Below are positions 32,278-44,100 of a stretch of 64,000 nucleotides of DNA, piece after piece. Under the pieces are notes generated by a model that was not told the origin of the DNA, did not search any database, and was given only the letters and a program-made list of their open reading frames with translations. The stretch lies in contig OZ281497.1 in NCBI GenBank assembly GCA_965637545.1, forward strand, positions 18,290,001-18,354,000, written 5' to 3'. Position numbers and translations under genes: made by a program. Position 1 is the stretch's first letter. Each line of letters opens with the position of its first letter. The DNA comes from Phallusia mammillata. Taxonomy: Eukaryota.

Positions 32278-34102
32278 ATGTTGCAAAGACTAGCCAAAGG
32301 GGCCCATCGATCCAACGGCGCCGACGGCAATACGCCCAATGGAATGCAAAATAATCAAGGTAAAAAATCTTAAATTGTTGGGGGATGTAATCAGGACAAA
32401 ACTAATGTCACTTAAAATGATTAATAGGAATGTTTGCAGTAAATGCACCAGAACCACCTACTGTAGGAAAGGTTGATCATCACAGCATAGAACTGTTTTG
32501 GGAACATGATAGTGATGTCCATTCTGGTGACAAACGGTACCGATGGTGTTGGGTAGTCATTTAAATGTTTTTGTATTATCTATTTATGTTTTGGCAGAGT
32601 CAAATTTACACTTCAAGAGGAAGACCGAAGGACAAAAGAGTACAAAACTGTTTACAAGTAAAATTACTGATCACAAAAATGTTACAATTTTTGTACTGAC
32701 GCCACTTTGTTATTGCATGTTAGTGGGTTTGCTGATACATATAAAATTGAGGGTCTTGATCCACTCCAAAAATATACTTACTGCTTGCAAGTGAGCACAA
32801 GTGCTGGAGACATTTCAATCAGTCCACCAATAACTGTTTGCACAACAAGTACGATGATGTTTATTAATGTGCATGCAACGAAGTCTAAATGTTTACCATT
32901 ATATATACTTTGTAAATAAATGTAGAAGAGCCATACAACAGTGAACAACTTCACCGGTCTGTTTTGAAAGGAGATAAGGAGACACTAATAAAAATATTGG
33001 AATCTGGGTATGAGTTTTATGTGTATCTATTTATTGGTTCATTATGATGACATTAAATAAATTGTCTTTGCAGGGATGTGAATGTGGATGTGACTGATAA
33101 ACTTGGATTTACTCCTCTTATGAATGGTTCACAAAAGGGTTTTCTTGAGTAAGCAACCCACAATGTCACTAACTTTTCAAATAGTGTAACTTTAAAAATA
33201 CTTTGCAGTATTGTGGAAACTCTCATAGCTCATCGTGCAGATGTCATCATGACAAATAGCATCGGAAAAAATAGGTGGAAGAACATTGTTTGTAAATAGC
33301 AGAAACATCATATTGATCACAGATATTTTGTAGTATGATGCTTGCATGTTTCTCTGGGCATGAGGCTGTTGCTAGGAAACTAAAAGAAGCTGGAACAGCG
33401 TGGGATTGCACTGACAGGGGAGGAAGTACTGCTCTGCACTGGGCAGTGGATGGTGCTAACTGCCACCTAATTGAGTGGATGATTGAAGATGGTGCCCCAG
33501 TATGTTTATTATTTGCCATGTTGCAACTGTATGATGATTTACCATTACAACAACGATGTAGGTGGATATTCATGATAAAGCTTCAGAATGGACACCACTG
33601 ATGAGATGTGCTGCTTTGAGTGGCAATGTTAAAGTTGCAACAGTTCTGATAAAAGCTGGGTCTGCAATAGATGCTGTTGACAAGTAAATATTTTTGTTCC
33701 AACTATAGTTGCCATGAATTGCCTTTGTTACTTAACTTCTTTACAGCAAAGGTAACACACCACTGATGATTGCTGCTCTAAATGGACATTTGGCATTGGT
33801 AGAGCTCCTTGTTTCCAGTGGTGCAAACCTGCTTGCCAAAAGCAAGGTTTGTTAACTAACCAGTGTTTGCTGTCTTAGAATGACATGTTAATAAAAGTGA
33901 ATTATTTTTAGCATGGAAAAACTGCCCTGGAAATGGCTCATTCTTTTGACAGGAGGGTAAGTTTATAGAATGTGAATTACTTAGTTAAGTTAAACTTCAA
34001 TTTGTTTGTGGTTACCAGCCTGTTGTGAAATTTCTGGAATCTGCAATTGAAGCAATGAATGAACAAAGAGCAAATACAAGTGATACCTCCATCAACATTT
34101 AA
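32278..34102 (+). CDS. FANK1: Fibronectin type III and ankyrin repeat protein, 12 exons, ~367 aa
   Basis: Exons 32278-32359, 32440-32536, 32598-32657, 32724-32848, 32926-33007, 33074-33148, 33209-33274, 33334-33499, 33562-33683, 33747-33846, 33912-33956, 34019-34102. FN3 (PEPPTVGKVDHHSIELFW...YTYCLQV), then ankyrin repeats (GFTPLM, GSTALHWAVDG, WTPLMR, GNTPLMIAALNGH, GKTALEMA). Confidence 0.92.
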
Positions 34103-34475
34103 TTCTCCAAAATCTTCTTCATGCGAGTTCCAGGGTGTTTTTAGCATTTGCACTGCCTGTACAACTACATTGTCCAAGTCGATAGCCACCAATAGTGGTA
34201 GCAGTATTTTATCACTTGTGTGCAGTCATTTTCTCCTCAGTGACTTATGTTGCTTGGGTGAATTGTACTGCTGTTTAATTAGCTGCAATAGGTTTTGTTA
34301 CTGTTCATATTTTACACAGTTCGGTGTACATATTTCATTAGTATTTCAACAGAAAAAATATTTTTTTGTAGAACATTTTAGTTGTGATAATATATTCACC
34401 CACAATGATTGTCTATGTGTATATCAATAGGTAAAGAAAAGTATTGCAAGGGAAATTGCACAGGAAATGGAAAGA

Positions 34476-36587
34476 CTATAATTCAGTTTTTGACTTATGT
34501 TGCTTTCTTTGTATTTCTTGATATGACATATTTCTAGAAACAGTGTAGTCCAACAAGTTTGAGTAATTCAACAGAAGTTTTTTCCAGTAGCATTCCACAT
34601 CTTCCATTCGCAGCCTTTGCTCTATGAACCTTTTGCCCCTATAACAAATGACAAACCATGTTAAAAACATTCTATCGAGTTTGTTGTCCAGACAGCAATG
34701 ATTTGACACAACATGTTGCACAAACCATTCCTAAGTTCATAAAAAAGGGGATAGTTAGCCAACATCCTCCAGGGCCTGAGGCCACGAAACTATTCACAAC
34801 CTCTGCAATAGCTCTATTTTACCCAGACAAACAATATATTTTCCTCTTAACTTTGATCAGTTTTTGATTCAGGAGGCAAGGGACTACTGCCCAAGCATTA
34901 TGAGTGAGTCAACAACACTACCTTGTGGCTATCTGTTTCATTAGGTCATCATTCTCCCGAGCGAATTCCAGTAATTCCTCAACATCTTTTAAATCAGTAT
35001 TAACTGGAATGTAGTGAACCCATGGTTTCAAAGCTGGATAAAAGAACTCCAGCCACTCATGTCCAACATGGAACACCAATGAGTTACACAAAAACAGATG
35101 CTTCAAACGAAAACTTGCTGCAACCCCACGAAAATTGAACAGGTATCTAACCAAAAGTAGAAAATAGTCTTTAGAGAATGCAGTGGCATTTTCAGTTATA
35201 CATTATTTAAAAACTGATATATATCGATGCTTAAAATTGATGTCTTGATTGACTAACAAAATTAATTACCATGGCTGCAGAAAATTATAAAAACTACCAT
35301 TTTTTCAATGTTAAGATTTATTTGAACTGCAGAGTGAATAAGTCAAGACTAGACATACCAAAAGTAACTTACTTATATTTGCAGTGATCAATAAGATGTA
35401 CAACTTCTGCAGGCTCTGCTCCGAGAGTATCTTTTTCTGATTTCCATGCCTGATTTTTTGTGTACTGTGCATCAACCAGCTCCGGCTTTTTCCTTGAGAG
35501 CAAAACCAATGGATCTCGTTGACTGCTGGTTCTTGACCCTCTGAAGAATGCTGTATTTTGCTTTAAACTCCATGGAAACTCTTTTGATTTTCTAAAAAAG
35601 TTAAGTTGTTAGGTTGAGCTTAAGTCGTTCAACACTTTGTAAACACACACTTCGCAAGTTCTTCTCTCATTTGATCCCATCTACCGAGACCAGTAGGGTA
35701 AAGTGGATACACAGCTGGACCACCTTGCCAAAAGGTCCATGCTGGATACATTATATCACAATGCACATCTTTCTATAACACACACAATGTATCAAATTCC
35801 TTTAAACAACTTTGGGCGATTGTGTACATTGCACTTACCACTTTGCTAAAGGAAAAAACTGGTAGATGCCTTGCATGCCGATTGGATTGTGGCCAATCAT
35901 GAACATTGATGCCAAATTCCATGTTGGGAAGTTCATCAATTATGTTCAAAATAAAATGCTCCACTCCTGAGCACCTACAAATGCATGTTAGCTTAACTTT
36001 AGGATCATACTGGTAATATTTGCAATCGTGTTGTTAGTCTTAACAAATATAGATGTGAAGATTTATAGCCTACATGAAACTATTCAAGGCACATTTTTTG
36101 TTTTCTTCACTGGATGTGGATGTGTTTTAAAGTATTTGCTAACCAACTATCAATGTTACCTATTTTTTAAAGCTAATCATAATCTAGGTTTTTTATAGGC
36201 ATTAAATATTACCTGCTTGGAAACATACATTTTTCCTCTCGATACAATTTGTGGTCAATTATTTGATAGTGAACAGATTTTTCCAAAGCACTGTCAACAT
36301 CATCTTTAGTGATTTTTCCCTTTTCTCTCCAGATCTTCAAATCATAATCTATCACATCAGCATGACAGGTGCAATTACCCTTGCATGGGACATAGCTTTT
36401 CTTTGCTGCTTCAATTTTCTTGATATACTTTGTCCATCTGTCTAAATATTTGCCATATTGTAAAAAACATAGTAAAACTATGTTTGAATGTATTTTTACC
36501 TTTGCCAGCTCCATTGCAGGTCAAAACTGTAACTGTCAGAAACAGAAAATGAAATAATGCAAGTCTAAAACAAATACAAACCTTCAT
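34476..36587 (-). CDS. POGLUT1: Protein O-glucosyltransferase 1 (Rumi/KTELC1), 7 exons, ~393 aa
   Basis: Exons 36587-36500, 36441-36213, 35974-35839, 35772-35651, 35591-35373, 35146-34922, 34638-34476. Motifs [63 protein letters not shown]-terminal ER-retention signal KTEL. Confidence 0.97.
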
Positions 36588-36966
36588 TACTTTTGCTGCA
36601 CAATAAAAATGAAACATAATAATAAAAACATAACAACATTGCACTTCTGAGGGTACAACATAATAAATATTTATGGCACAGCTACTGTGATGTTGATTTT
36701 TTTTAAAATATCAGAGTTGTTTTGCATAATTGAGCAACATAATCAATACATTGTATGTAGTTCACTATGCAGGTGTGTATACACTTTCATAGACACTTAA
36801 AAAAGGGTTTGAAGCACTTTTTTAGTAGCCATACAGTGTTTACTAAACACAGAAAGACCCATCACTTTATTTTGCACGGTGCAAAAATCCAGTTGCACTT
36901 TAGCACTCTTCTTTTGAAAGTGGAACCAACTGCTTGCTATGCTAGGAAATATCAGTAAAAATAAGA

Positions 36967-37533
36967 CTAGCTGGGTGTACTTTGTTGATCAATGCCTCCT
37001 GTTTGTGATAAATGTTTAATTGGGTCAACCCAGTTCCACCCTCTTGGTCTTTCACCCATCATGTTTACCCTGTCCGCCATTTTACGTTTCTGTGCTTTTG
37101 TAAGCTGTTCTTTTTTAACTTTTGGTTTAGCAACAGGCTGCTTTGGTTCATTTAATGGTTCATCGACAGGTTTGGAAACCTGTAACAGCTGGTTTTTCAT
37201 AAGATCTTCATGATTTTCCTTTGCCCAATCAATAATTGAGTATAACATGGCTTCTCCAATGAGTCCACTAGCTTGCTCGGTCAGCTGATTTTGCACATCT
37301 GCTTTAACAGAGTCCAGTATGTGGTTGTTGTAGAAGGCATCCAAATTAATTTCAGGTGGAACCTCAGGATAGGTTGGAGGCCAAATAAATTCGATAAGAA
37401 ATGACTTTGCATGTCCGTCTTCACCAATTTTATACTGGTAACATGTGTCATTAACTTGTTTAAAGTTTGAATCGTCTTCAAAGATCGAGGCAAGAACTTC
37501 TTGTTCCTCACTTTGTTCTTCAGTTAACGACAT
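36967..37533 (-). CDS. RWDD4: RWD domain-containing protein 4, single coding exon, 188 aa
   Basis: EQEVLASIFEDD, YPEVPP, and the C-terminal KKEQLTKAQKRK...GERPRGWNWVDPIKHLS typical of RWDD4. Confidence 0.93.
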   Translation of the reverse strand: MSLTEEQSEEQEVLASIFEDDSNFKQVNDTCYQYKIGEDGHAKSFLIEFIWPPTYPEVPPEINLDAFYNNHILDSVKADVQNQLTEQASGLIGEAMLYSIIDWAKENHEDLMKNQLLQVSKPVDEPLNEPKQPVAKPKVKKEQLTKAQKRKMADRVNMMGERPRGWNWVDPIKHLSQTGGIDQQSTPS

Positions 37534-38263
37534 ATTATTACACATACAAAAGTACCTTTGCAATAAAAAATCTATTAATTTTTACAACTACATCAACACT
37601 TCACAATAACTTGTGCCTTTCATTATAGATGGCTTTTAACTGTCCTTTTGATCAATAATTGCTGGTTGATGAATTATGCCTGTCAACAACATCATATTCA
37701 TTGATGCACGATAATGGTTTAGACAGGCCAGTATTCATAACGTATTTACATCGAGTTTTGTTGTTGGCAACAAGTTTTAAAACTAATTTGAATCAATAGG
37801 TTTACTTTTGTGTTTACTGAACAATGTCCACAGTCACACTCCACATCATAACTTTCTAGTTCTACAGCAGAGAGCGGAGTGCACACTGCTTTCCCTTTTG
37901 TCACGTGCGGCAGTTGCAAAACCTGTTTTACAACAGCATCAATATAAAAATTGTACCCGAATAAAATAATCTAAAATGTTTGAAAAAATATGTGATTTGA
38001 TTTTTCAACTATAATATGTTTTTGTTTATCTGTTATTTAAACAAACAAGACTAAAAAATGAGTTCTTATACTTTGCATTCGTATATTTAGGAGTTTTCTC
38101 ATGGAACATGAACAGGCGGGAAATGGTGTGTTTTTGTTTTTTGATAAATTTGCAACGCTAATTGTTAAAAGTGTATGTGACTATCTGTGTTGTATTTTGC
38201 GGAGTGCTCTGATTTAAAATAATCTAGTTGCATTTTGCGTTCAGTGCTTGAGCCGACATTGTG

Positions 38264-39595
38264 ATGAACTTTATACAAAATTGTCTGTCGAGGCATTCGT
38301 CCGAAAAATTTTCTGCAACACTTGAAGAAATTTTTGAAAAGTACAAAGTATTGTACAATGAGATTGATGACTCCATCATTGAAACACGCTCTGGGAGAAA
38401 AGTATTTGTAGGAAAACCGCATGATTTTGAAGTTGAAACTAATCCATCATATTCTTTTCATGAAGATGTAGATTTGTCCTCAGAAAGCGATGATGCTAAA
38501 GGTGAACAATGGGACAATGTAAGTTTGCTTTCATATTCACATTTAAATGGCATTGCAAATGTTTGTGGGGCAATAAACAAGCAAAAACATATGACCGAAA
38601 GCACCAGACTAAGTGACCTATCAGAGGAATCAAATCACAGCTGTGAAAGTGAAAATGATGATGATTTCTGGAAATTGCCCCTGAAGAGTTTTTCCATGGC
38701 ACATTCTGTTCAAACAAATGTTTCAAAACATTCTGATTTTCTGAGAAAGGATATTTTAGAAGATAGCTTCGATGTAAATGAAGATCATGGAAAATACAAA
38801 ATGAGTGCAGCAAAAAATGAAACTGTGGGCATCAGTCAACATCCACGGAATCGATTGTTGGATTTTGATGAGGATGAAACAACTGTCCAACAGGATGAGG
38901 ATCGCCACACTGACTCATTTAGCTCTAACGAAGAAAACAGTTTAAGTTTAAGATCACATCTTCATCCTGTTCCAGCAGTTTCCAGTACCAACCAACCTTT
39001 TTCACCCACAAATCACTTATCTTCTCCATTTAAAAGAGTTACTTTGGGTCCTGTACACACTGAAGACAACATACTTGCAGCTTCTCCAGAATGTAATTCT
39101 ACAATTAGTAACCGTCATTCTTCAATGTCATTAGATGGATCATATTGTAAACGACATGAGTCTCGAACTAATAACCATGTCTCGAATAGAGAAAAGGACA
39201 TTGTAACGATTAGGCCAAAGACGAAATCGAATTGGGAGTTTGATAAATCCTCCAACATCAGGAATTCAGGTCAGACAAAGTTAGTTAAGTCAAGCACAAC
39301 TCCAGAATGCAGATCAGCACCAAAGGTTTTCAATAGAGTAATTACTAAAAGTTCATCCAAAAAACATGTTCGCAAAATTTTTCATGAAAACTGCTCACAC
39401 AATCAATCAGAAAATTTGGCAATAAAACCAAAGCATAAAAAAATACCAGTGGATATATTGTGTTCTTCTGATGAGGAAAACTCCAATGACTTCAACTGCA
39501 AAACTCCGAAAAGGCACTTTAGGCCACAAAAAACTGTATCAAGTACAATGAAACTTCGTAGTGGGAAAGCAAAGACAAATATATTTCATTGTTAA
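38264..39595 (+). CDS. 443-aa single-exon protein: putative Scm3/HJURP-like N-terminal domain plus long Ser/acidic disordered region and basic C-terminus
   Basis: Long open ORF. An acceptor ttcag ending 38244 and an in-frame stop at 38249 fix the ATG at 38264. The N-terminus SSEKFSATLEEIFEKY...IIETRSGRKVFVG resembles the Scm3 domain by eye. The CDS is well supported; the family call is tentative. Confidence 0.7.
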   Translation: MNFIQNCLSRHSSEKFSATLEEIFEKYKVLYNEIDDSIIETRSGRKVFVGKPHDFEVETNPSYSFHEDVDLSSESDDAKGEQWDNVSLLSYSHLNGIANVCGAINKQKHMTESTRLSDLSEESNHSCESENDDDFWKLPLKSFSMAHSVQTNVSKHSDFLRKDILEDSFDVNEDHGKYKMSAAKNETVGISQHPRNRLLDFDEDETTVQQDEDRHTDSFSSNEENSLSLRSHLHPVPAVSSTNQPFSPTNHLSSPFKRVTLGPVHTEDNILAASPECNSTISNRHSSMSLDGSYCKRHESRTNNHVSNREKDIVTIRPKTKSNWEFDKSSNIRNSGQTKLVKSSTTPECRSAPKVFNRVITKSSSKKHVRKIFHENCSHNQSENLAIKPKHKKIPVDILCSSDEENSNDFNCKTPKRHFRPQKTVSSTMKLRSGKAKTNIFHC

Positions 39596-40665
39596 ATTAT
39601 AGCTGTGTCATTTCTGTAGTAAATTTACAATTTATACATAAACAACTATATGTATATTTATGTTGTTTTAAACATGTATAAATTATTTTCTTTAACCATT
39701 TCACGATTTTATTGAAAGCTCTCTTTTAGTCACCAAGTAGAATTTGACAGTTAGCGGCATTGAAAGTTGTTAAATAACATTGAAAGCAACTATTGGTCAA
39801 GGCGAAGAATCCAGTTCAAGAATGTTTGCCAAACCCAACACTGAGAATTATCCTGGAAAGTTTTACCTTGCAACGAAGTTACAGGCAAGTCCATTCGGTG
39901 TTAAATACAACAGACACAGTTTTTCATAAATTATGTCAATCATTTCTTACAAGTTTTCACTTAGTGCAATAATCTTAATATTGTAGTGAGATTTATCAGT
40001 CCAGTGTCATATAATGCAATTAGTCATTGTTCAAGTTTAAGTAGTTGTAATAATCAGGGTTTTGTAGTCCTAGAGTTGAACAGTTAGATTAAAGTCAAAT
40101 ATTCGTAGTCTTTATCACTGCAACCAGAAATAAACAAAAAAGCTATAATTGCAGTGGGCTTACAAACATTCTCCAAGGTATGTGTCTTTGTCAACACCTA
40201 AAAATGTATTCGAGGTGTCAGCATGCGCTTTGTCACTCTAAAGATTTAAACTGCACAATCACAAAACAGCCCAGAGCTAACAGAAGTATATTTTGTTACA
40301 ATATGTTATGATGTGAGGTAATACGGTTTCATCGATTATTGCCAATGGTCAAGTCTGATACAAGTGGATTTCACCTCTTTAATGTACAAACTATATTTTT
40401 TGCTGCTTTCGTCAATATCATGCACAAATCATGTGCATAAAACCTCTGTGTTGATTGACTTTAAACCAAACGTTATTGGCCTACAGGTCATGTAAATGCA
40501 GTACAACGAACTGCATTTTATTTGACATATAGGATGTAACGTTTTGTGTCAAATTGTCTACAGAGTTTGTGTAAACAACCTAATAATCGCATATTTGTGG
40601 TTATAGTGCGGCAGAGTCAACTTAATATGTTTTTCTGATTGACTGTAAATCCTGACAGTCTACAG

Positions 40666-41023
40666 CAGTGGTTCCCAACCAGGGCCCATGGCCCCCCAGG
40701 GGGGCCACGAGCTGTGTTCTGGGGGGGCACGGGTGTAGATTCACCAGAAACACCCACTAACAGCCATTTTCTTTTTAACATTATTCCCTAATTTAATCGA
40801 CTATTTCACATACTATTTGTGTATAGTGAGGTTTTCACAATTACAGATTCTTATTTACGCTATTGGACCTGTTTAAAGCCTAAATTAGTACCAAATTTCA
40901 ACACGAGATTGCCATTTACATTTTTAGGGGGACCACAGGTCCTACAGGGTTACTTGAGGGGGGCCACGAAGCCCAAAAGTTACTTTTAGGGGGCCACGGT
41001 CCACAAAAGGTTGGGAACCACTG
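40666..41023. mobile_element. hAT (Buster/Charlie-type) MITE (358 bp)
   Basis: Perfect TIRs CAGTGGTTCCCAACC. Perfect 8-bp TSD GTCTACAG at 40658-40665 and 41024-41031. GGGGGCCAC subterminal repeats. Confidence 0.93.
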
Positions 41024-41117
41024 GTCTACAGTTTCAATATTCGAAAACTGCGCACGGTATGACACAATAATTTTTTTATGACACAATAAGAAACGTAAAT
41101 TGCCGTGTTGCTGTCCA

Positions 41118-44100
41118 CTATGCATCTTCAGATGACGATCTCATTCCTGCCATTTCATTTTCAATTGCTTGCAAGGAATGCTCCCTTGCTTTTTCCCATT
41201 TGTGAGGTCCACTTAAACGGAAGTGATACGGGAGTGGAGGTCCAAAGTAAACATTAAAGGCAAGCTTGGGGTCAGTAAACAGCAGCCATGAAAATGACGG
41301 TAACAACTTCATATACTTGGCTAATTCTTCGCGATATTCGAGTATAGTTACCTGTTGTAACAAAACATGCACATTCATAATACAACAACAACATCTTTTT
41401 ATCTATTGCTAACCCGGTAAACATATTCGCCCTCCGCTCTTCGAATGATGCTCTCCCTTTGTTGCTTCCAAAGTTTTTTCATTTCAATCTTTGACGGCAA
41501 AGATCTCTCACCGCTTAAAACTTGAGCAACATATCGGCTCTAGACAAAACATTGGACAAGTCAGATACACAGCAATAAAGTGACTTGAAAACACCACACA
41601 AGGGACAACCTGTAGTTCTGCTGTCGAATTCACAGGACCGTTGCCGATTGGAATTAATCCAACAAAAGTTAAAGTGTCGGAATGTTTGGCTTCAATCGGA
41701 AATATCCACCAATGTAGTTTACGGTCACTGGCATTTGCTAAAGAGTAATAGCTTACATATTGCCAAGGTAGCTTCTAAGGTATCACCGTTGAACAAAACC
41801 TACCTGGAATAACGTGTTTAGGCAAAAACGGAAATTTTGAGGTGTACCCTGTGGAAACCACAACGATGTCCACATGCTCCTTGGATCCGTCTTCAAATGT
41901 AACACTGTGTTCATCGAAGCATTTTATACCAGGCTTTACCTTAACTTGTCCGCTGTATATTTTAATCTGTATTTGGTCGTTCATAGCAACGGTGCCGCGC
42001 AAACTGCCTATTGGATACCTAGAACATAAATGATTTACAATTGTAAGGTAATTCCTAGTAGGCCTAAGGTCACTTACTGTGAGGTTAGGCCACTGGCTGT
42101 ATGGTCAAATCGGCTTTCAAATAGAGATCGCAAGATTGATTGTACCATCCAGGTGGGGGCAAGTTTCACCAGCGAGGCTTTAAAGCGATTTATGCCGGCC
42201 AGATCAACAGGCAAACCTTTGGACTACATATATGTTAGTTGGTGTTTCGTATCTAAACAAAACGCTGAAGGTTTCCTTACCAATGACATTCGTGGTAATA
42301 ACCAAGCTCCATGTCGTGCGCTGATGTAAATCTTTTGTGTTAACTCGGCACATTCTACGGCAATGTCACAACCCGAGTGTCCGCATCCGATAATCACAAC
42401 CGACTTATCTGTTAAAATTATTGTAGGCTATCAACAAAATGTGACAGGAATTTTTTTTACTTTATGTACCTCGGAAACTTTCGTTGGCTTCGAACACTCC
42501 ACTAGAAATTATTTCCCCTTTGAATTTGTCGCTGAGACCCGGGATGTCCGGACGAATTTGTTCGTTCAACTGACCCGTCGCGACGATAACTGCTCTGAAT
42601 TCCTTTTCAATTTCTTCCTTACCAGTTTTAATGCAGACTATCCAGGAGCCTGAAAAGCAAGGGTTATAGGCAGGGTTGCAATACTGTCCTTATTTCTAAG
42701 ATTTGTGCTTACTTCGAAGGGTAATGTCTTAGAAAAATTTTCTGTCCTTATTTGTTAGGACTGTCCTTGTTTTTGGCTTGAGTCCTTATTTTGTCTTATT
42801 TTTAACAATTACAAGTTAAATTCCTGCTAAAAGTAAACCTAGACCTGGGTTGTCGTGATATGCAAGAAGTATTTCCTACGAACAAGGAGTTGCTGGAACA
42901 GATTGTTCCTGGCAAAAAATATGACATGTGATATGCCATGGCTCGTTTAAATGCGAAGATTTGTACGAAAAAGTTTGTTTCGTTTGGTATGAAAATTCAA
43001 TTTTTCGGTTGCCCTTATTTCGGGGTCAATGTCGATGGCATCCCTAGTTATAGGTGAACTTGTACAGTAACAACAGTTTTCACAAGCACTTTTGGTGACA
43101 TCATTGTTTCCTTGTGACGAACCAAAAGTAACAATAATAATACTTTGGGCCTTGTGTACCGGTTTCATCGTGGGTCGCTGATTCTCGAACCGAAGTAACT
43201 TCTGTATTATAAATCACGTGTTCAAGCAGGTTGAAATGTTCTGCATACATTCGAAGATATTCCAACGTTTGTTTCTGTCGTAAGTAAGGTGGCCATTCCT
43301 GTGAGAAAATGAGAAAGAAGTTCAAAGTAGTAAAGCATCTACTCTGCTTAATTGGGTGGGACTAAAACCAAATATTCGGCACTTATGCTGAATAAAATCA
43401 ACCGAATCACTTATGACGTCACGTGAAATTGTACGCAACAATTTTGACATAAAAATATAAGTTTTACTACAAGGCAAACAGCGGCGTTTCCACAACAGCA
43501 TAGTTGTGTTTTAAAATCATATTATTTCTGGTTTTCAATGCTTTAGAAATTTATATTTTGGGTTATTACGCAATTGAAAGATTATGTATTAATTAAGCAG
43601 AACAGTTACTTTTTACCGTCATAAAATTGTGTTCGTAAAGATGCGGCTTTTGCCTTACCTTGGGAACAGGAAAGTCAGAGAAACACGACCCTTCCTTGCT
43701 AACGTTAGCTACCAATGACTCGTAGATTTGCGGAATAAATCCAGTCCGTTTTCGTTCGGCTGTGTTCCACAATCCTCCTTTACAACAATTCTTTTTAAAC
43801 AACTGGATAGTTTCGGTAGTTAAAATGTTTCCCTAATTTGTATATGTTATAGACATAAACGTCTTGTTCTCATGTACGCTATATAACCTAACACAGGCTA
43901 TATAGTAAGCTCCAAAAGGGAGCTTATACATTATGATGAATTATATTACATTATGATGATACATTATGATGAATTATACTTTATTTCCGTTTATAAAACT
44001 CATAACAATGTACATGGTCGCGTATATACCTATGTCTGATGCTTTCTCATAGCACACTGGTGTAAGTCCATACTCCAAGCAAGATTTTATGGTCGCCAAA

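What the first reader, a model, noticed from the sequence alone, without database searches (positions are those of the whole stretch)
38264..38440. Candidate tunicate Scm3/HJURP CENP-A chaperone
Seen: MNFIQNCLSRHSSEKFSATLEEIFEKYKVLYNEIDDSIIETRSGRKVFVG at the extreme N-terminus of an otherwise low-complexity 443-aa protein. Known: human HJURP begins LLQKLRASRRRFQRRMQRLIEKYNQPFEDTPVVQMATLTYETPQGLRIWGG, and fungal Scm3 shares the helix ending I/L-F/I-x-KY followed by acidic residues and a beta hairpin. The spacing S-x3-F-x3-hydrophobic-x2-IFEKY and ETRSGRKVF versus ETPQGLRIW both align. Supporting context: the SH3BP4 homologue is 5.6 kb away, and human HJURP and SH3BP4 both lie in 2q37 about 1 Mb apart (recalled). 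Such fast-evolving chaperones are typically missed by BLAST outside vertebrates and fungi.
Basis: partly seen in the sequence, partly recalled or inferred. Interest (0 to 1): 0.82.

Follow-up and report, generated by a model that had tools for sequence, protein, structure and literature searches.

The report
Likely sea-squirt HJURP centromere chaperone
An expressed, intron-free gene of the sea squirt Phallusia mammillata most likely encodes this animal's very divergent version of HJURP, the protein that loads the centromere histone CENP-A; this would add tunicates to a family that a 2026 paper already showed to be widespread in animals.

Summary
Window 38264-39595 (+) is a 443-codon ORF with the quoted N-terminus. 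Four RNA-like contig sets from four studies each carry it as one unspliced ~1.5 kb transcript. The genome is Phallusia mammillata or a near relative.

Two sequence tests point to HJURP and nothing else. Pfam Scm3 is the only family hit (residues 8-36, 20-21 bits, E 2e-4 to 5e-4, below the 24.3-bit cut-off), with EKY on the same profile columns as human HJURP. A whole-protein language-model search of 7.7 million clusters returns as its top three the zebrafish HJURP family (si:dkeyp-117h8.4) and two tetrapod HJURP clusters, at lead-level scores of 0.76-0.81.

Against it, no orthologue was found: 1.84 billion representatives, the word search, a metagenome scan and six RWDD4 loci of Ciona, Clavelina and four unnamed assemblies were all blank. 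Human HJURP also fails to find yeast Scm3 by phmmer. The SH3BP4 synteny argument is not supported.

Verdict: probably (~0.78) a real tunicate Scm3/HJURP, a new member of a known kind. Hollis et al. (Sci Adv 2026) already showed HJURP is conserved across most Metazoa; tunicates are not named in the text held here. The scan's only other note here is this same stretch.

The parts
38116..38123 (-). E2F-type motif TTTCCCGC (GCGGGAAA on the + strand) at the 5' end of the longest transcript contig
   Evidence: only 4 matches to TTTSSCGC in the 64 kb window (7 expected), and one sits at 38116-38123; the longest contig begins at 38118. Post-hoc and weak, but it suits a proliferation-linked gene.
38118..39652 (+). 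Unspliced mRNA of about 1.5 kb (5' ends at 38118/38156/38173/38180; 3' ends at 39616-39652)
   Evidence: one contig of 1480-1499 nt without a joint in X1, X2 and X3; X17 has two abutting contigs. Depth is zero at 37576-37969 and 39743-40136. Neighbouring genes show CT..AC joints of 58-70 nt, so these contig sets behave as RNA.
38264..39595 (+). Coding sequence, 443 aa plus stop, single exon
   Evidence: in-frame stop upstream at 38249.
38285..38371 (+). Residues 8-36: match to Pfam Scm3 (PF10384) profile positions 4-32 of 53. An amphipathic helix with F16, L20, I23, F24 and Y27 on one face, ending in E25-K26-Y27.
   Evidence: 20.1-21.3 bits, E 2.2e-4 to 5.2e-4, gathering score 24.3. (same hydrophobic spacing as human HJURP F-x3-M-x2-LI-x2-Y).
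38372..38413 (+). Residues 37-50, SIIETRSGRKVFVG: putative beta-hairpin aligned to human HJURP TYETPQGLRIWGG
   Evidence: alignment. (a single-sequence AF2 model places strands at 37-40 and 46-49 after helix 20-33, but pLDDT is about 40, so this is only compatible, not evidence).
38414..38983 (+). Residues 51-240: acidic, Ser-rich, predicted-disordered half (net charge -1 to -8 per 40 aa; DDD, DEDE and DED runs; RNRLLDFDE at 195)
39104..39592 (+). Residues 281-443: basic half (net +4 to +6 per 40 aa) with basic clusters KKHVR and KRHFR and a full CDK-consensus site T414-PKR. A second CDK site, S254-PFK, lies just upstream.
   Evidence: Roles in nuclear import, DNA binding or centromere targeting are inferred only.
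36967..37563 (-). Context: single-exon RWDD4-like gene lying head-to-head with the candidate, with about 550 bp between the two transcript starts
   Evidence: RWD domain, E 4e-20; 99% identical to a Phallusia mammillata protein.

Best explanation
The ORF at 38264-39595 encodes the Scm3/HJURP-type CENP-A chaperone of Phallusia mammillata, or one such chaperone. Inferred mechanism, by analogy with the human HJURP-CENP-A-H4 structure (3R45) and the features listed by Hollis et al. 2026: the N-terminal amphipathic helix (about residues 12-31) lies along the alpha-2 helix of CENP-A; K26-Y27 contacts a conserved CENP-A glutamate; and the following acidic/short-hydrophobic stretch and hairpin (NEIDDSIIETRSGRKVFVG) pairs with the CATD strand. 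Together these would hold one pre-nucleosomal CENP-A-H4 dimer. The acidic disordered middle would shield histone charge. The basic C-terminal half, with its CDK-consensus sites, would give nuclear import, DNA contact and cell-cycle-gated centromere targeting. Shown here: the ORF, its transcription as an intronless mRNA, and the sequence resemblance by two methods. Inferred: every binding and targeting step.
For: Pfam Scm3 is the only family hit. It scores 16.4 bits (E 0.0072) on the full protein and 20.1-21.3 bits (E 2.2e-4 to 5.2e-4) on residues 1-40, 1-60 and 1-80, while residues 41-443 hit nothing. Rescaling the full-length E-value to one model and about 15-20 thousand ascidian proteins gives about 0.005 chance hits per proteome (my arithmetic; the gene number is my own knowledge). 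The register agrees with a real member: the verified human HJURP stretch scores only 36.4 bits on profile positions 2-38, with EKY on the same columns as the candidate's E25-K26-Y27 (profile 21-23), to within one position. The whole-protein language-model search puts the si:dkeyp-117h8.4 family first (0.81) and two 'Holliday junction recognition protein' clusters second and third (0.78, 0.76); 6 of the 10 best named hits share that family. si:dkeyp-117h8.4 is the zebrafish gene validated as HJURP in PMC13322267. The unaided MAFFT alignment and shuffle test give z 4.3-4.8. The candidate has the features that paper calls general: the KY dipeptide, hydrophobic residues every 2-4 positions, an acidic/short-hydrophobic stretch after KY, an N-terminal position, and a long polar, largely unstructured remainder. 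The gene is transcribed in four studies, with an E2F-type motif at the transcript start. Tunicates keep CenH3, in Oikopleura (centromere-localised) and in Ciona (PMC3156773), so a chaperone is expected.
Against: The Pfam score is below the curated cut-off (24.3 bits), and the match covers only the helix half of the model. The Atlas scores are under 0.9, which the tool calls a lead only, and the N-terminal fragments alone gave no usable Atlas hit. Both positive tests read the same single sequence, so they are not fully independent. No orthologue was found anywhere, so conservation of the motif is untested. The gene is absent from the conserved RWDD4 neighbourhood of Ciona and Clavelina. A joint candidate-plus-human profile did not reach yeast Scm3 or fly CAL1 in the PDB, and it picked up unrelated helix+KY look-alikes at 14-16 bits. 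The monomer model has pLDDT 40.7. No complex prediction or experiment was possible.
Confidence: 0.78

Rival explanations
1. It is a lineage-specific, intrinsically disordered nuclear protein of ascidiid sea squirts. Its N-terminal amphipathic helix ending in EKY resembles Scm3 by chance, and it has nothing to do with CENP-A.
For: There are no detectable relatives in 1.84 billion representatives. The gene is absent at the syntenic site in Ciona and Clavelina. The Pfam hit is below the gathering score. Helix+KY look-alikes such as NadR turn up at 14-16 bits. The Atlas scores are in a range that shuffled proteins reach a third of the time.
Against: Two different methods both pick the one family proposed in advance out of 24,736 Pfam models and 7.7 million Atlas clusters. 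The motif is at the N-terminus, in the right register, and is followed by the expected acidic/hydrophobic hairpin stretch that the Pfam match does not even use. Blank sequence searches are normal for this family: human HJURP does not find yeast Scm3 or CAL1 either.
Confidence: 0.17
2. It is a true Scm3-domain gene, but a retroposed or relocated copy: a paralogue, perhaps germline- or embryo-specific. A multi-exon parental HJURP elsewhere in the genome would be the main chaperone.
For: The gene is intronless although its neighbours have many short introns. It lies between RWDD4 and FMO, where Clavelina has an empty 2.2 kb gap and Ciona a 1.2 kb gap.
Against: No poly(A) relic or target-site duplication flanks the gene. 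Its RWDD4-like neighbour is also single-exon, so lacking introns is not unusual at this locus. Hollis et al. report a single strong hit in most deuterostome genomes. The rest of the genome could not be searched here.
Confidence: 0.2
3. It is a transcribed but non-coding or decaying locus, with an ORF that is open by chance.
For: Two of the three polymorphisms seen in RNA contigs change the protein (W324C, R358G).
Against: A 443-codon open frame in AT-rich DNA is far beyond chance. It is covered end to end by the transcript in four studies with at most one difference per contig.
Confidence: 0.02

Closest known systems
Human HJURP, Scm3 domain (PDB 3R45 chain C)
   Same: Both have an N-terminal helix with the spacing F-x3-(M/L)-x2-(L/I)(I/F)-E-K-Y, followed by a hairpin: (Y/I)-E-T-x2-G-x-(R/K)-(I/V)-(W/F)-x-G. 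There are 10 identical positions over about 50 residues. Both match Pfam Scm3 in the same register. Both are long, polar and otherwise poorly structured.
   Different: Overall identity is only 24%, and there are 5 fewer residues between KY and the hairpin. The candidate scores 20-21 bits against 36.4 for the human stretch. It is 443 aa against about 750. No HJURP_mid or HJURP_C Pfam domain was detected. It is intronless.
Zebrafish HJURP (si:dkeyp-117h8.4; Hollis et al. 2026, PMC13322267)
   Same: It is the best whole-protein language-model match (0.81, 151 of 256 features). It was also missed by ordinary BLAST and recognised only through the scm3 domain.
   Different: The zebrafish protein has been validated by centromere localisation and loss-of-function, whereas nothing has been tested for the ascidian protein. 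The cluster representative is 663 aa against 443. No residue-level alignment could be made, because the tools did not return that sequence.
Fungal Scm3 (PDB 2L5A, 2YFV) and Drosophila CAL1 (6XWS/6XWV)
   Same: All share the proposed job and the fold class: a helix along CENP-A alpha-2 plus a strand on the CATD, as described in PMC13322267.
   Different: There is no detectable sequence link from the candidate, from human HJURP, or from their joint profile.

Membership tests
Scm3/HJURP (Pfam PF10384) | The scm3 domain is recognised by the family profile at the curated threshold (24.3 bits) | tested here: inconclusive
   It is the only Pfam hit, at 16.4 bits on the full protein and 20.1-21.3 bits on the N-terminal pieces (E 2.2e-4 to 7.2e-3), which is 3-4 bits short of the gathering score. 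The human HJURP stretch reaches only 36.4 bits.
Scm3/HJURP | A KY dipeptide at the end of an amphipathic helix with hydrophobic residues every 2-4 positions | tested here: met
   F16, L20, I23, F24 and Y27 form the hydrophobic face, with K26-Y27 at the end. EKY falls on the same profile columns as in human HJURP, to within one position. The criterion is taken from PMC13322267.
Scm3/HJURP | An acidic/short-hydrophobic stretch after KY that forms beta strands | tested here: inconclusive
   The sequence NEIDDSIIETRSGRKVFVG fits the pattern and aligns to the human hairpin. Strands are predicted at 37-40 and 46-49, but at pLDDT about 40.
Scm3/HJURP | The domain sits at the N-terminus of a long, polar, largely unstructured protein | tested here: met
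   The match covers residues 8-50 of 443, with an in-frame stop 15 nt upstream of the ATG. The rest is Ser-, Asn- and Lys-rich with no domain hit.
Scm3/HJURP | A reciprocal or iterative sequence search links it to accepted HJURP or Scm3 proteins | tested here: not met
   phmmer against 1.84 billion representatives, the word search and the PDB searches found no HJURP. As a control, human HJURP also fails to find yeast Scm3 or CAL1. PSI-BLAST and the paper's HMMs were not available. The only link is the alignment-free Atlas hit list.
Scm3/HJURP | An HHpred match to solved scm3 structures (2L5A, 2YFV, 3R45, 6XWS/6XWV) | not testable with these tools
   No PDB profile library was on hand, and no orthologues were found from which to build a query profile.
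Scm3/HJURP | A predicted or solved complex with the species' own CENP-A-H4 that is selective over H3-H4 | not testable with these tools
   Only monomer prediction of unmodified sequences is offered, and P. mammillata CENP-A is not in the window.
Scm3/HJURP | The motif is conserved in orthologues of related species | tested here: inconclusive
   No orthologue was found by search or by synteny at six RWDD4 loci. The candidate's own protein is also missing from the collection, so ascidian coverage is thin.
Scm3/HJURP | It co-occurs with CENP-A in the lineage | tested here: met
   From the literature only: CenH3 is listed for Oikopleura dioica (centromere-localised) and for Ciona (PMC3156773). This was not checked in P. 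mammillata itself.
Scm3/HJURP | Centromere localisation, and loss of CENP-A on depletion | not testable with these tools
   This needs an experiment.

The most novel reading that the evidence does not exclude
Ascidiid sea squirts carry their only HJURP as a relocated, intronless gene that shares a roughly 550-bp divergent promoter region with RWDD4 and has an E2F site at its start. Tunicate HJURP has diverged so fast that even other ascidian orders share no detectable sequence with it. That would make tunicates the fastest-evolving deuterostome case of this chaperone. The basic C-terminal half, which lacks the vertebrate HJURP_mid and HJURP_C modules, would use a different way of finding the centromere.
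Probability: 0.25. Interest if true: 0.5.

Novelty: new member of a known kind. Interest (0 to 1): 0.4.

Why it matters
[quoted passage not shown] Neither the main text nor the supplementary PDF of the 2026 survey that found HJURP across most Metazoa names them, and no paper in the library links HJURP to an ascidian. A credible candidate would add tunicates to the deuterostome clades with a named candidate. [quoted passage not shown] Phallusia mammillata eggs and embryos are transparent and are commonly used for live imaging after mRNA injection (my own knowledge), so the prediction is cheap to test. The result is incremental, not surprising: the general conclusion that HJURP is hidden by fast divergence rather than lost is already published.

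Tried and rejected
- Word-index protein search with the full protein and with residues 1-80: no hits.
- Exhaustive phmmer against 1.84 billion representatives: 0 hits at E <= 0.001.
- Exact-sequence look-up: the protein is not in the collection.
- Metagenome contig scan: 187 pattern matches, none confirmed.
- Synteny walk: RWDD4 orthologue loci were fetched from Ciona intestinalis, Clavelina lepadiformis and four unnamed ENA assemblies; the Styela protein was not on record. Neither ORF listing nor tblastn found a relative of the candidate.
- PDB phmmer with the N-terminus: only an adenylate kinase at E 1.6.
- Joint candidate-plus-human profile against the PDB: it did not reach Scm3 or CAL1.
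- Atlas search with residues 1-80 and 1-60: no usable hit.
- Single-sequence AF2 of residues 1-100: pLDDT 40.7, so it is unusable for fold search and I ran none.
- Retrocopy hallmarks (target-site duplication, poly(A) relic): none found.
- SH3BP4 synteny: only faint Death-domain hints and no SH3 signature, so I rejected it as support.
- Table S1 and Data S1 of Hollis et al. are held only as unreadable archives. I therefore could not check whether a tunicate entry is listed there, nor use their HMMs.
- I considered TTTGAA (CHR-like) motifs upstream as a cell-cycle signal, but dropped this because such AT-rich hexamers are common in this genome.

Full report
**1. What is there.**
An in-frame TGA at 38249 closes the frame 15 nt upstream. 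The only upstream ATGs inside the transcript open a 12-codon uORF (38123) and a 1-codon ORF (38175), so the Scm3-like motif really is at the N-terminus.

The protein has two halves. Residues 1-240 are acidic and Ser-rich, and residues 281-443 are basic. There are two full CDK-consensus sites (S254-PFK, T414-PKR), basic clusters, and an RNRLLDFDE motif at 195.

**2. It is an expressed, intronless gene.**
I laid four small contig sets from four different studies on 36000-41900. Each covers the gene with one unspliced contig of about 1.5 kb; in X17 it is two abutting contigs. The 5' ends are at 38118, 38156, 38173 and 38180, and the 3' ends at 39616-39652. Depth is zero in both flanks (37576-37969 and 39743-40136). 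The neighbouring minus-strand genes show CT..AC joints of 58-70 nt, which are spliced introns.

The runs are only guessed to be RNA, but exon-only coverage with splice joints is what RNA looks like. An E2F-type motif (TTTCCCGC on the minus strand, 38116-38123) sits at the 5' end of the longest contig. It is one of only four such motifs in 64 kb. This is a weak, post-hoc hint of proliferation-linked transcription.

**3. Whose genome.**
The head-to-head neighbour (36967-37563, minus strand) is a single-exon RWD-domain gene. It is 99% identical to a UniProt 'RWD domain-containing protein 4-like' entry of Phallusia mammillata, against 66% for Ciona intestinalis. The window is therefore P. mammillata or a very close relative. 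This agrees with earlier agents' notes that this genome is a sea squirt.

**4. Tests of the Scm3/HJURP reading.**
(a) Pfam. Scm3 (PF10384) is the only family hit for the N-terminus. It scores 16.4 bits (E 0.0072) on the whole protein and 20.1-21.3 bits (E 2.2e-4 to 5.2e-4) on residues 1-40, 1-60 and 1-80. Residues 8-36 fall on profile positions 4-32 of 53. Residues 41-443 hit nothing. This is 3-4 bits under the gathering score of 24.3.

It scores only 36.4 bits on profile positions 2-38, and its match also stops before the hairpin. EKY falls on the same profile columns (21-23, to within one position) in both proteins. Rescaling the full-length E-value from 24,736 models to one model and roughly 15-20 thousand ascidian proteins gives about 0.005 chance hits per proteome. 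That is my arithmetic, and the gene number is my own knowledge.

(b) Alignment. R10, S12, F16, E25, K26, Y27, E40, T41, G44 and G50 are identical, and all the hydrophobic helix positions are matched. The local alignment score of 35 has z 4.3-4.8 and p about 0.001-0.002 against shuffles. The best-scoring place in the whole 443-aa protein is this N-terminal helix.

(c) Language-model features. With the whole protein as query, the three best of 7.7 million Atlas clusters are the 'Si:dkeyp-117h8.4 family' (0.81) and two 'Holliday junction recognition protein' clusters (0.78, 0.76), which carry HJURP_mid, HJURP_C and Scm3 domains. Six of the ten best named hits share that family. si:dkeyp-117h8.4 is the zebrafish gene that Hollis et al. 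validated as HJURP. The scores are under the tool's 0.9 line, and shuffled proteins often reach 0.8. The weight therefore lies in which families came up, namely the one family proposed beforehand, and not in the scores. The N-terminal fragments alone gave no usable hit.

(d) Published criteria. The paper names the general features of metazoan scm3 domains: the KY dipeptide, regularly spaced hydrophobic residues, an acidic/short-hydrophobic stretch after KY, and a long polar, unstructured remainder. It accepted first-pass hits with HMMER E-values from 0.99 down to 1e-16 before HHpred and AlphaFold checks. The candidate fits these features, and its E-value lies inside that range. I could not run the HHpred and multimer steps.

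(e) Lineage context. CenH3 is present in Oikopleura, where it is centromere-localised, and is listed for Ciona (PMC3156773). Ciona also has an M18BP1/KNL-2 homologue used in a published alignment. A CENP-A chaperone is therefore expected in tunicates.

**5. What speaks against it.**
No relative was found by any of these routes:
- the word search with the full protein and with residues 1-80;
- exhaustive phmmer over 1.84 billion representatives;
- a metagenome scan;
- PDB searches.

The candidate's own sequence is also missing from the 15-billion-protein collection, so ascidian coverage there is thin. Human HJURP itself finds no yeast Scm3 or fly CAL1 by phmmer. Blank searches are therefore the norm for this family and weigh little.

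The synteny result is more telling. The block Ank-GT90-RWD is conserved in Ciona (L001) and Clavelina (L002), and Clavelina also has FMO genes on the far side, as the window does. Yet the space where the candidate should lie (1.2 kb in Ciona, 2.2 kb in Clavelina) holds no long ORF and no tblastn match. The four unnamed ENA loci hold none either. The gene was either inserted here in the Phallusia lineage or lost or moved elsewhere. Being intronless, it could be a retroposed copy, although no target-site duplication or poly(A) relic remains, and the RWDD4-like neighbour is also single-exon.

The joint candidate-plus-human profile reached no further family member, and it picked up unrelated helix+KY look-alikes at 14-16 bits. 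That is a reminder that this motif carries little information. The monomer AF2 model (helix 20-33, strands 37-40 and 46-49) is compatible but has pLDDT 40.7, as expected for a segment that folds only on its histone partner. I did not use it for fold search.

**6.
The neighbouring minus-strand gene at about 45.2-49.6 kb gives only faint Death and DEATH_SH3BP4 hits on one 49-aa piece (E 0.04-0.07), no hit on its larger ORFs, and no SH3 signature. Human HJURP's immediate neighbours listed in PMC4614861 (ATG16L1, USP40, HEATR7B1, TRPM8, SPP2) do not appear among the window genes I identified. Given also the lack of synteny among ascidians, the SH3BP4 argument adds nothing.

**7. Comparison with what is known, and novelty.**
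Hollis et al. (Sci Adv 2026, PMC13322267) showed by remote homology, AlphaFold and genetics that Scm3/HJURP is kept in most metazoan clades. The species it names include coelacanth, zebrafish, a shark, lamprey, amphioxus and a sea star. Tunicates are not named in the main text or in the supplementary PDF. Table S1 is not readable here, so a tunicate entry there cannot be excluded. No paper in the library links HJURP with Ciona, ascidians or Phallusia in substance.

The finding is thus a probable new member of a known family in a clade with no named candidate in the text held here. It is not a new kind of thing.

**8. Verdict.**
My confidence is about 0.78 that this is a true Scm3/HJURP-type chaperone, and 0.17 that it is a chance look-alike in a lineage-specific disordered protein. 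Whether it is the only such gene or a retroposed paralogue is open (about 0.2 for the latter, which overlaps the main reading). Interest is 0.4.

Noticed in passing
window 36535-37572 (-) and 38118-39652 (+): The RWDD4-like gene and the candidate are transcribed divergently, with about 550 bp between their contig ends. Both are single-exon. This may be a shared bidirectional promoter region.
   Followed up: partly
window 33300-43300; L001 10001-18861; L002 1-18919: The microsynteny Ank-repeat gene, GT90 glycosyltransferase and RWDD4 is conserved between Phallusia, Ciona intestinalis and Clavelina lepadiformis. FMO genes also flank it in Phallusia and Clavelina, but not in Ciona, where an M20 peptidase takes that place.
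   Followed up: partly
window 39426: In runs X1 and X3 a low-depth contig follows the gene up to 39426 and then continues for 255 nt of unrelated sequence (GAAGTTATTCGGG...). There is no GT at the break, so it is not an obvious splice donor. It could be an assembly chimera or a rare joined form.
   Followed up: no
window 40661-40741: Short, very deep contigs (depth up to about 190) share this stretch but carry many different sequences before 40666 in all four runs. It looks like a short repeated element or a sequence shared by many transcripts near the 3' end of the FMO gene.
   Followed up: no
window 41058-41076: Run X3 lacks 19 nt here, and run X17 has one extra T at 41070. This is an indel polymorphism in the terminal part of the FMO-like gene.
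   Followed up: no
L003, L004, L005, L006 (ENA ERZ21736675, ERZ25067576, ERZ25067582, ERZ25067590): These assemblies hold animal-like contigs of 146 kb to 1.5 Mb with an RWDD4 gene. L004-L006 also carry GT90 fragments, and L003, L005 and L006 carry reverse-transcriptase or transposase ORFs (LINE-type in L003). RWDD4 identity to Phallusia is 56-59%. The organisms are unnamed in the output. L004-L006 keep the RWD-GT90 order seen in ascidians.
   Followed up: no
window 38123-38161 (+): A 12-codon uORF (MVCFCFLINLQR) is present only in the longest 5' UTR form (the contig that begins at 38118).
   Followed up: no
window 39235 and 39335: Two amino-acid-changing polymorphisms (W324C, R358G) and one silent change (T320, at 39223) appear among the four RNA contig sets. 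All lie in the basic C-terminal half and none in the first 319 codons. The numbers are too small to test constraint.
   Followed up: partly
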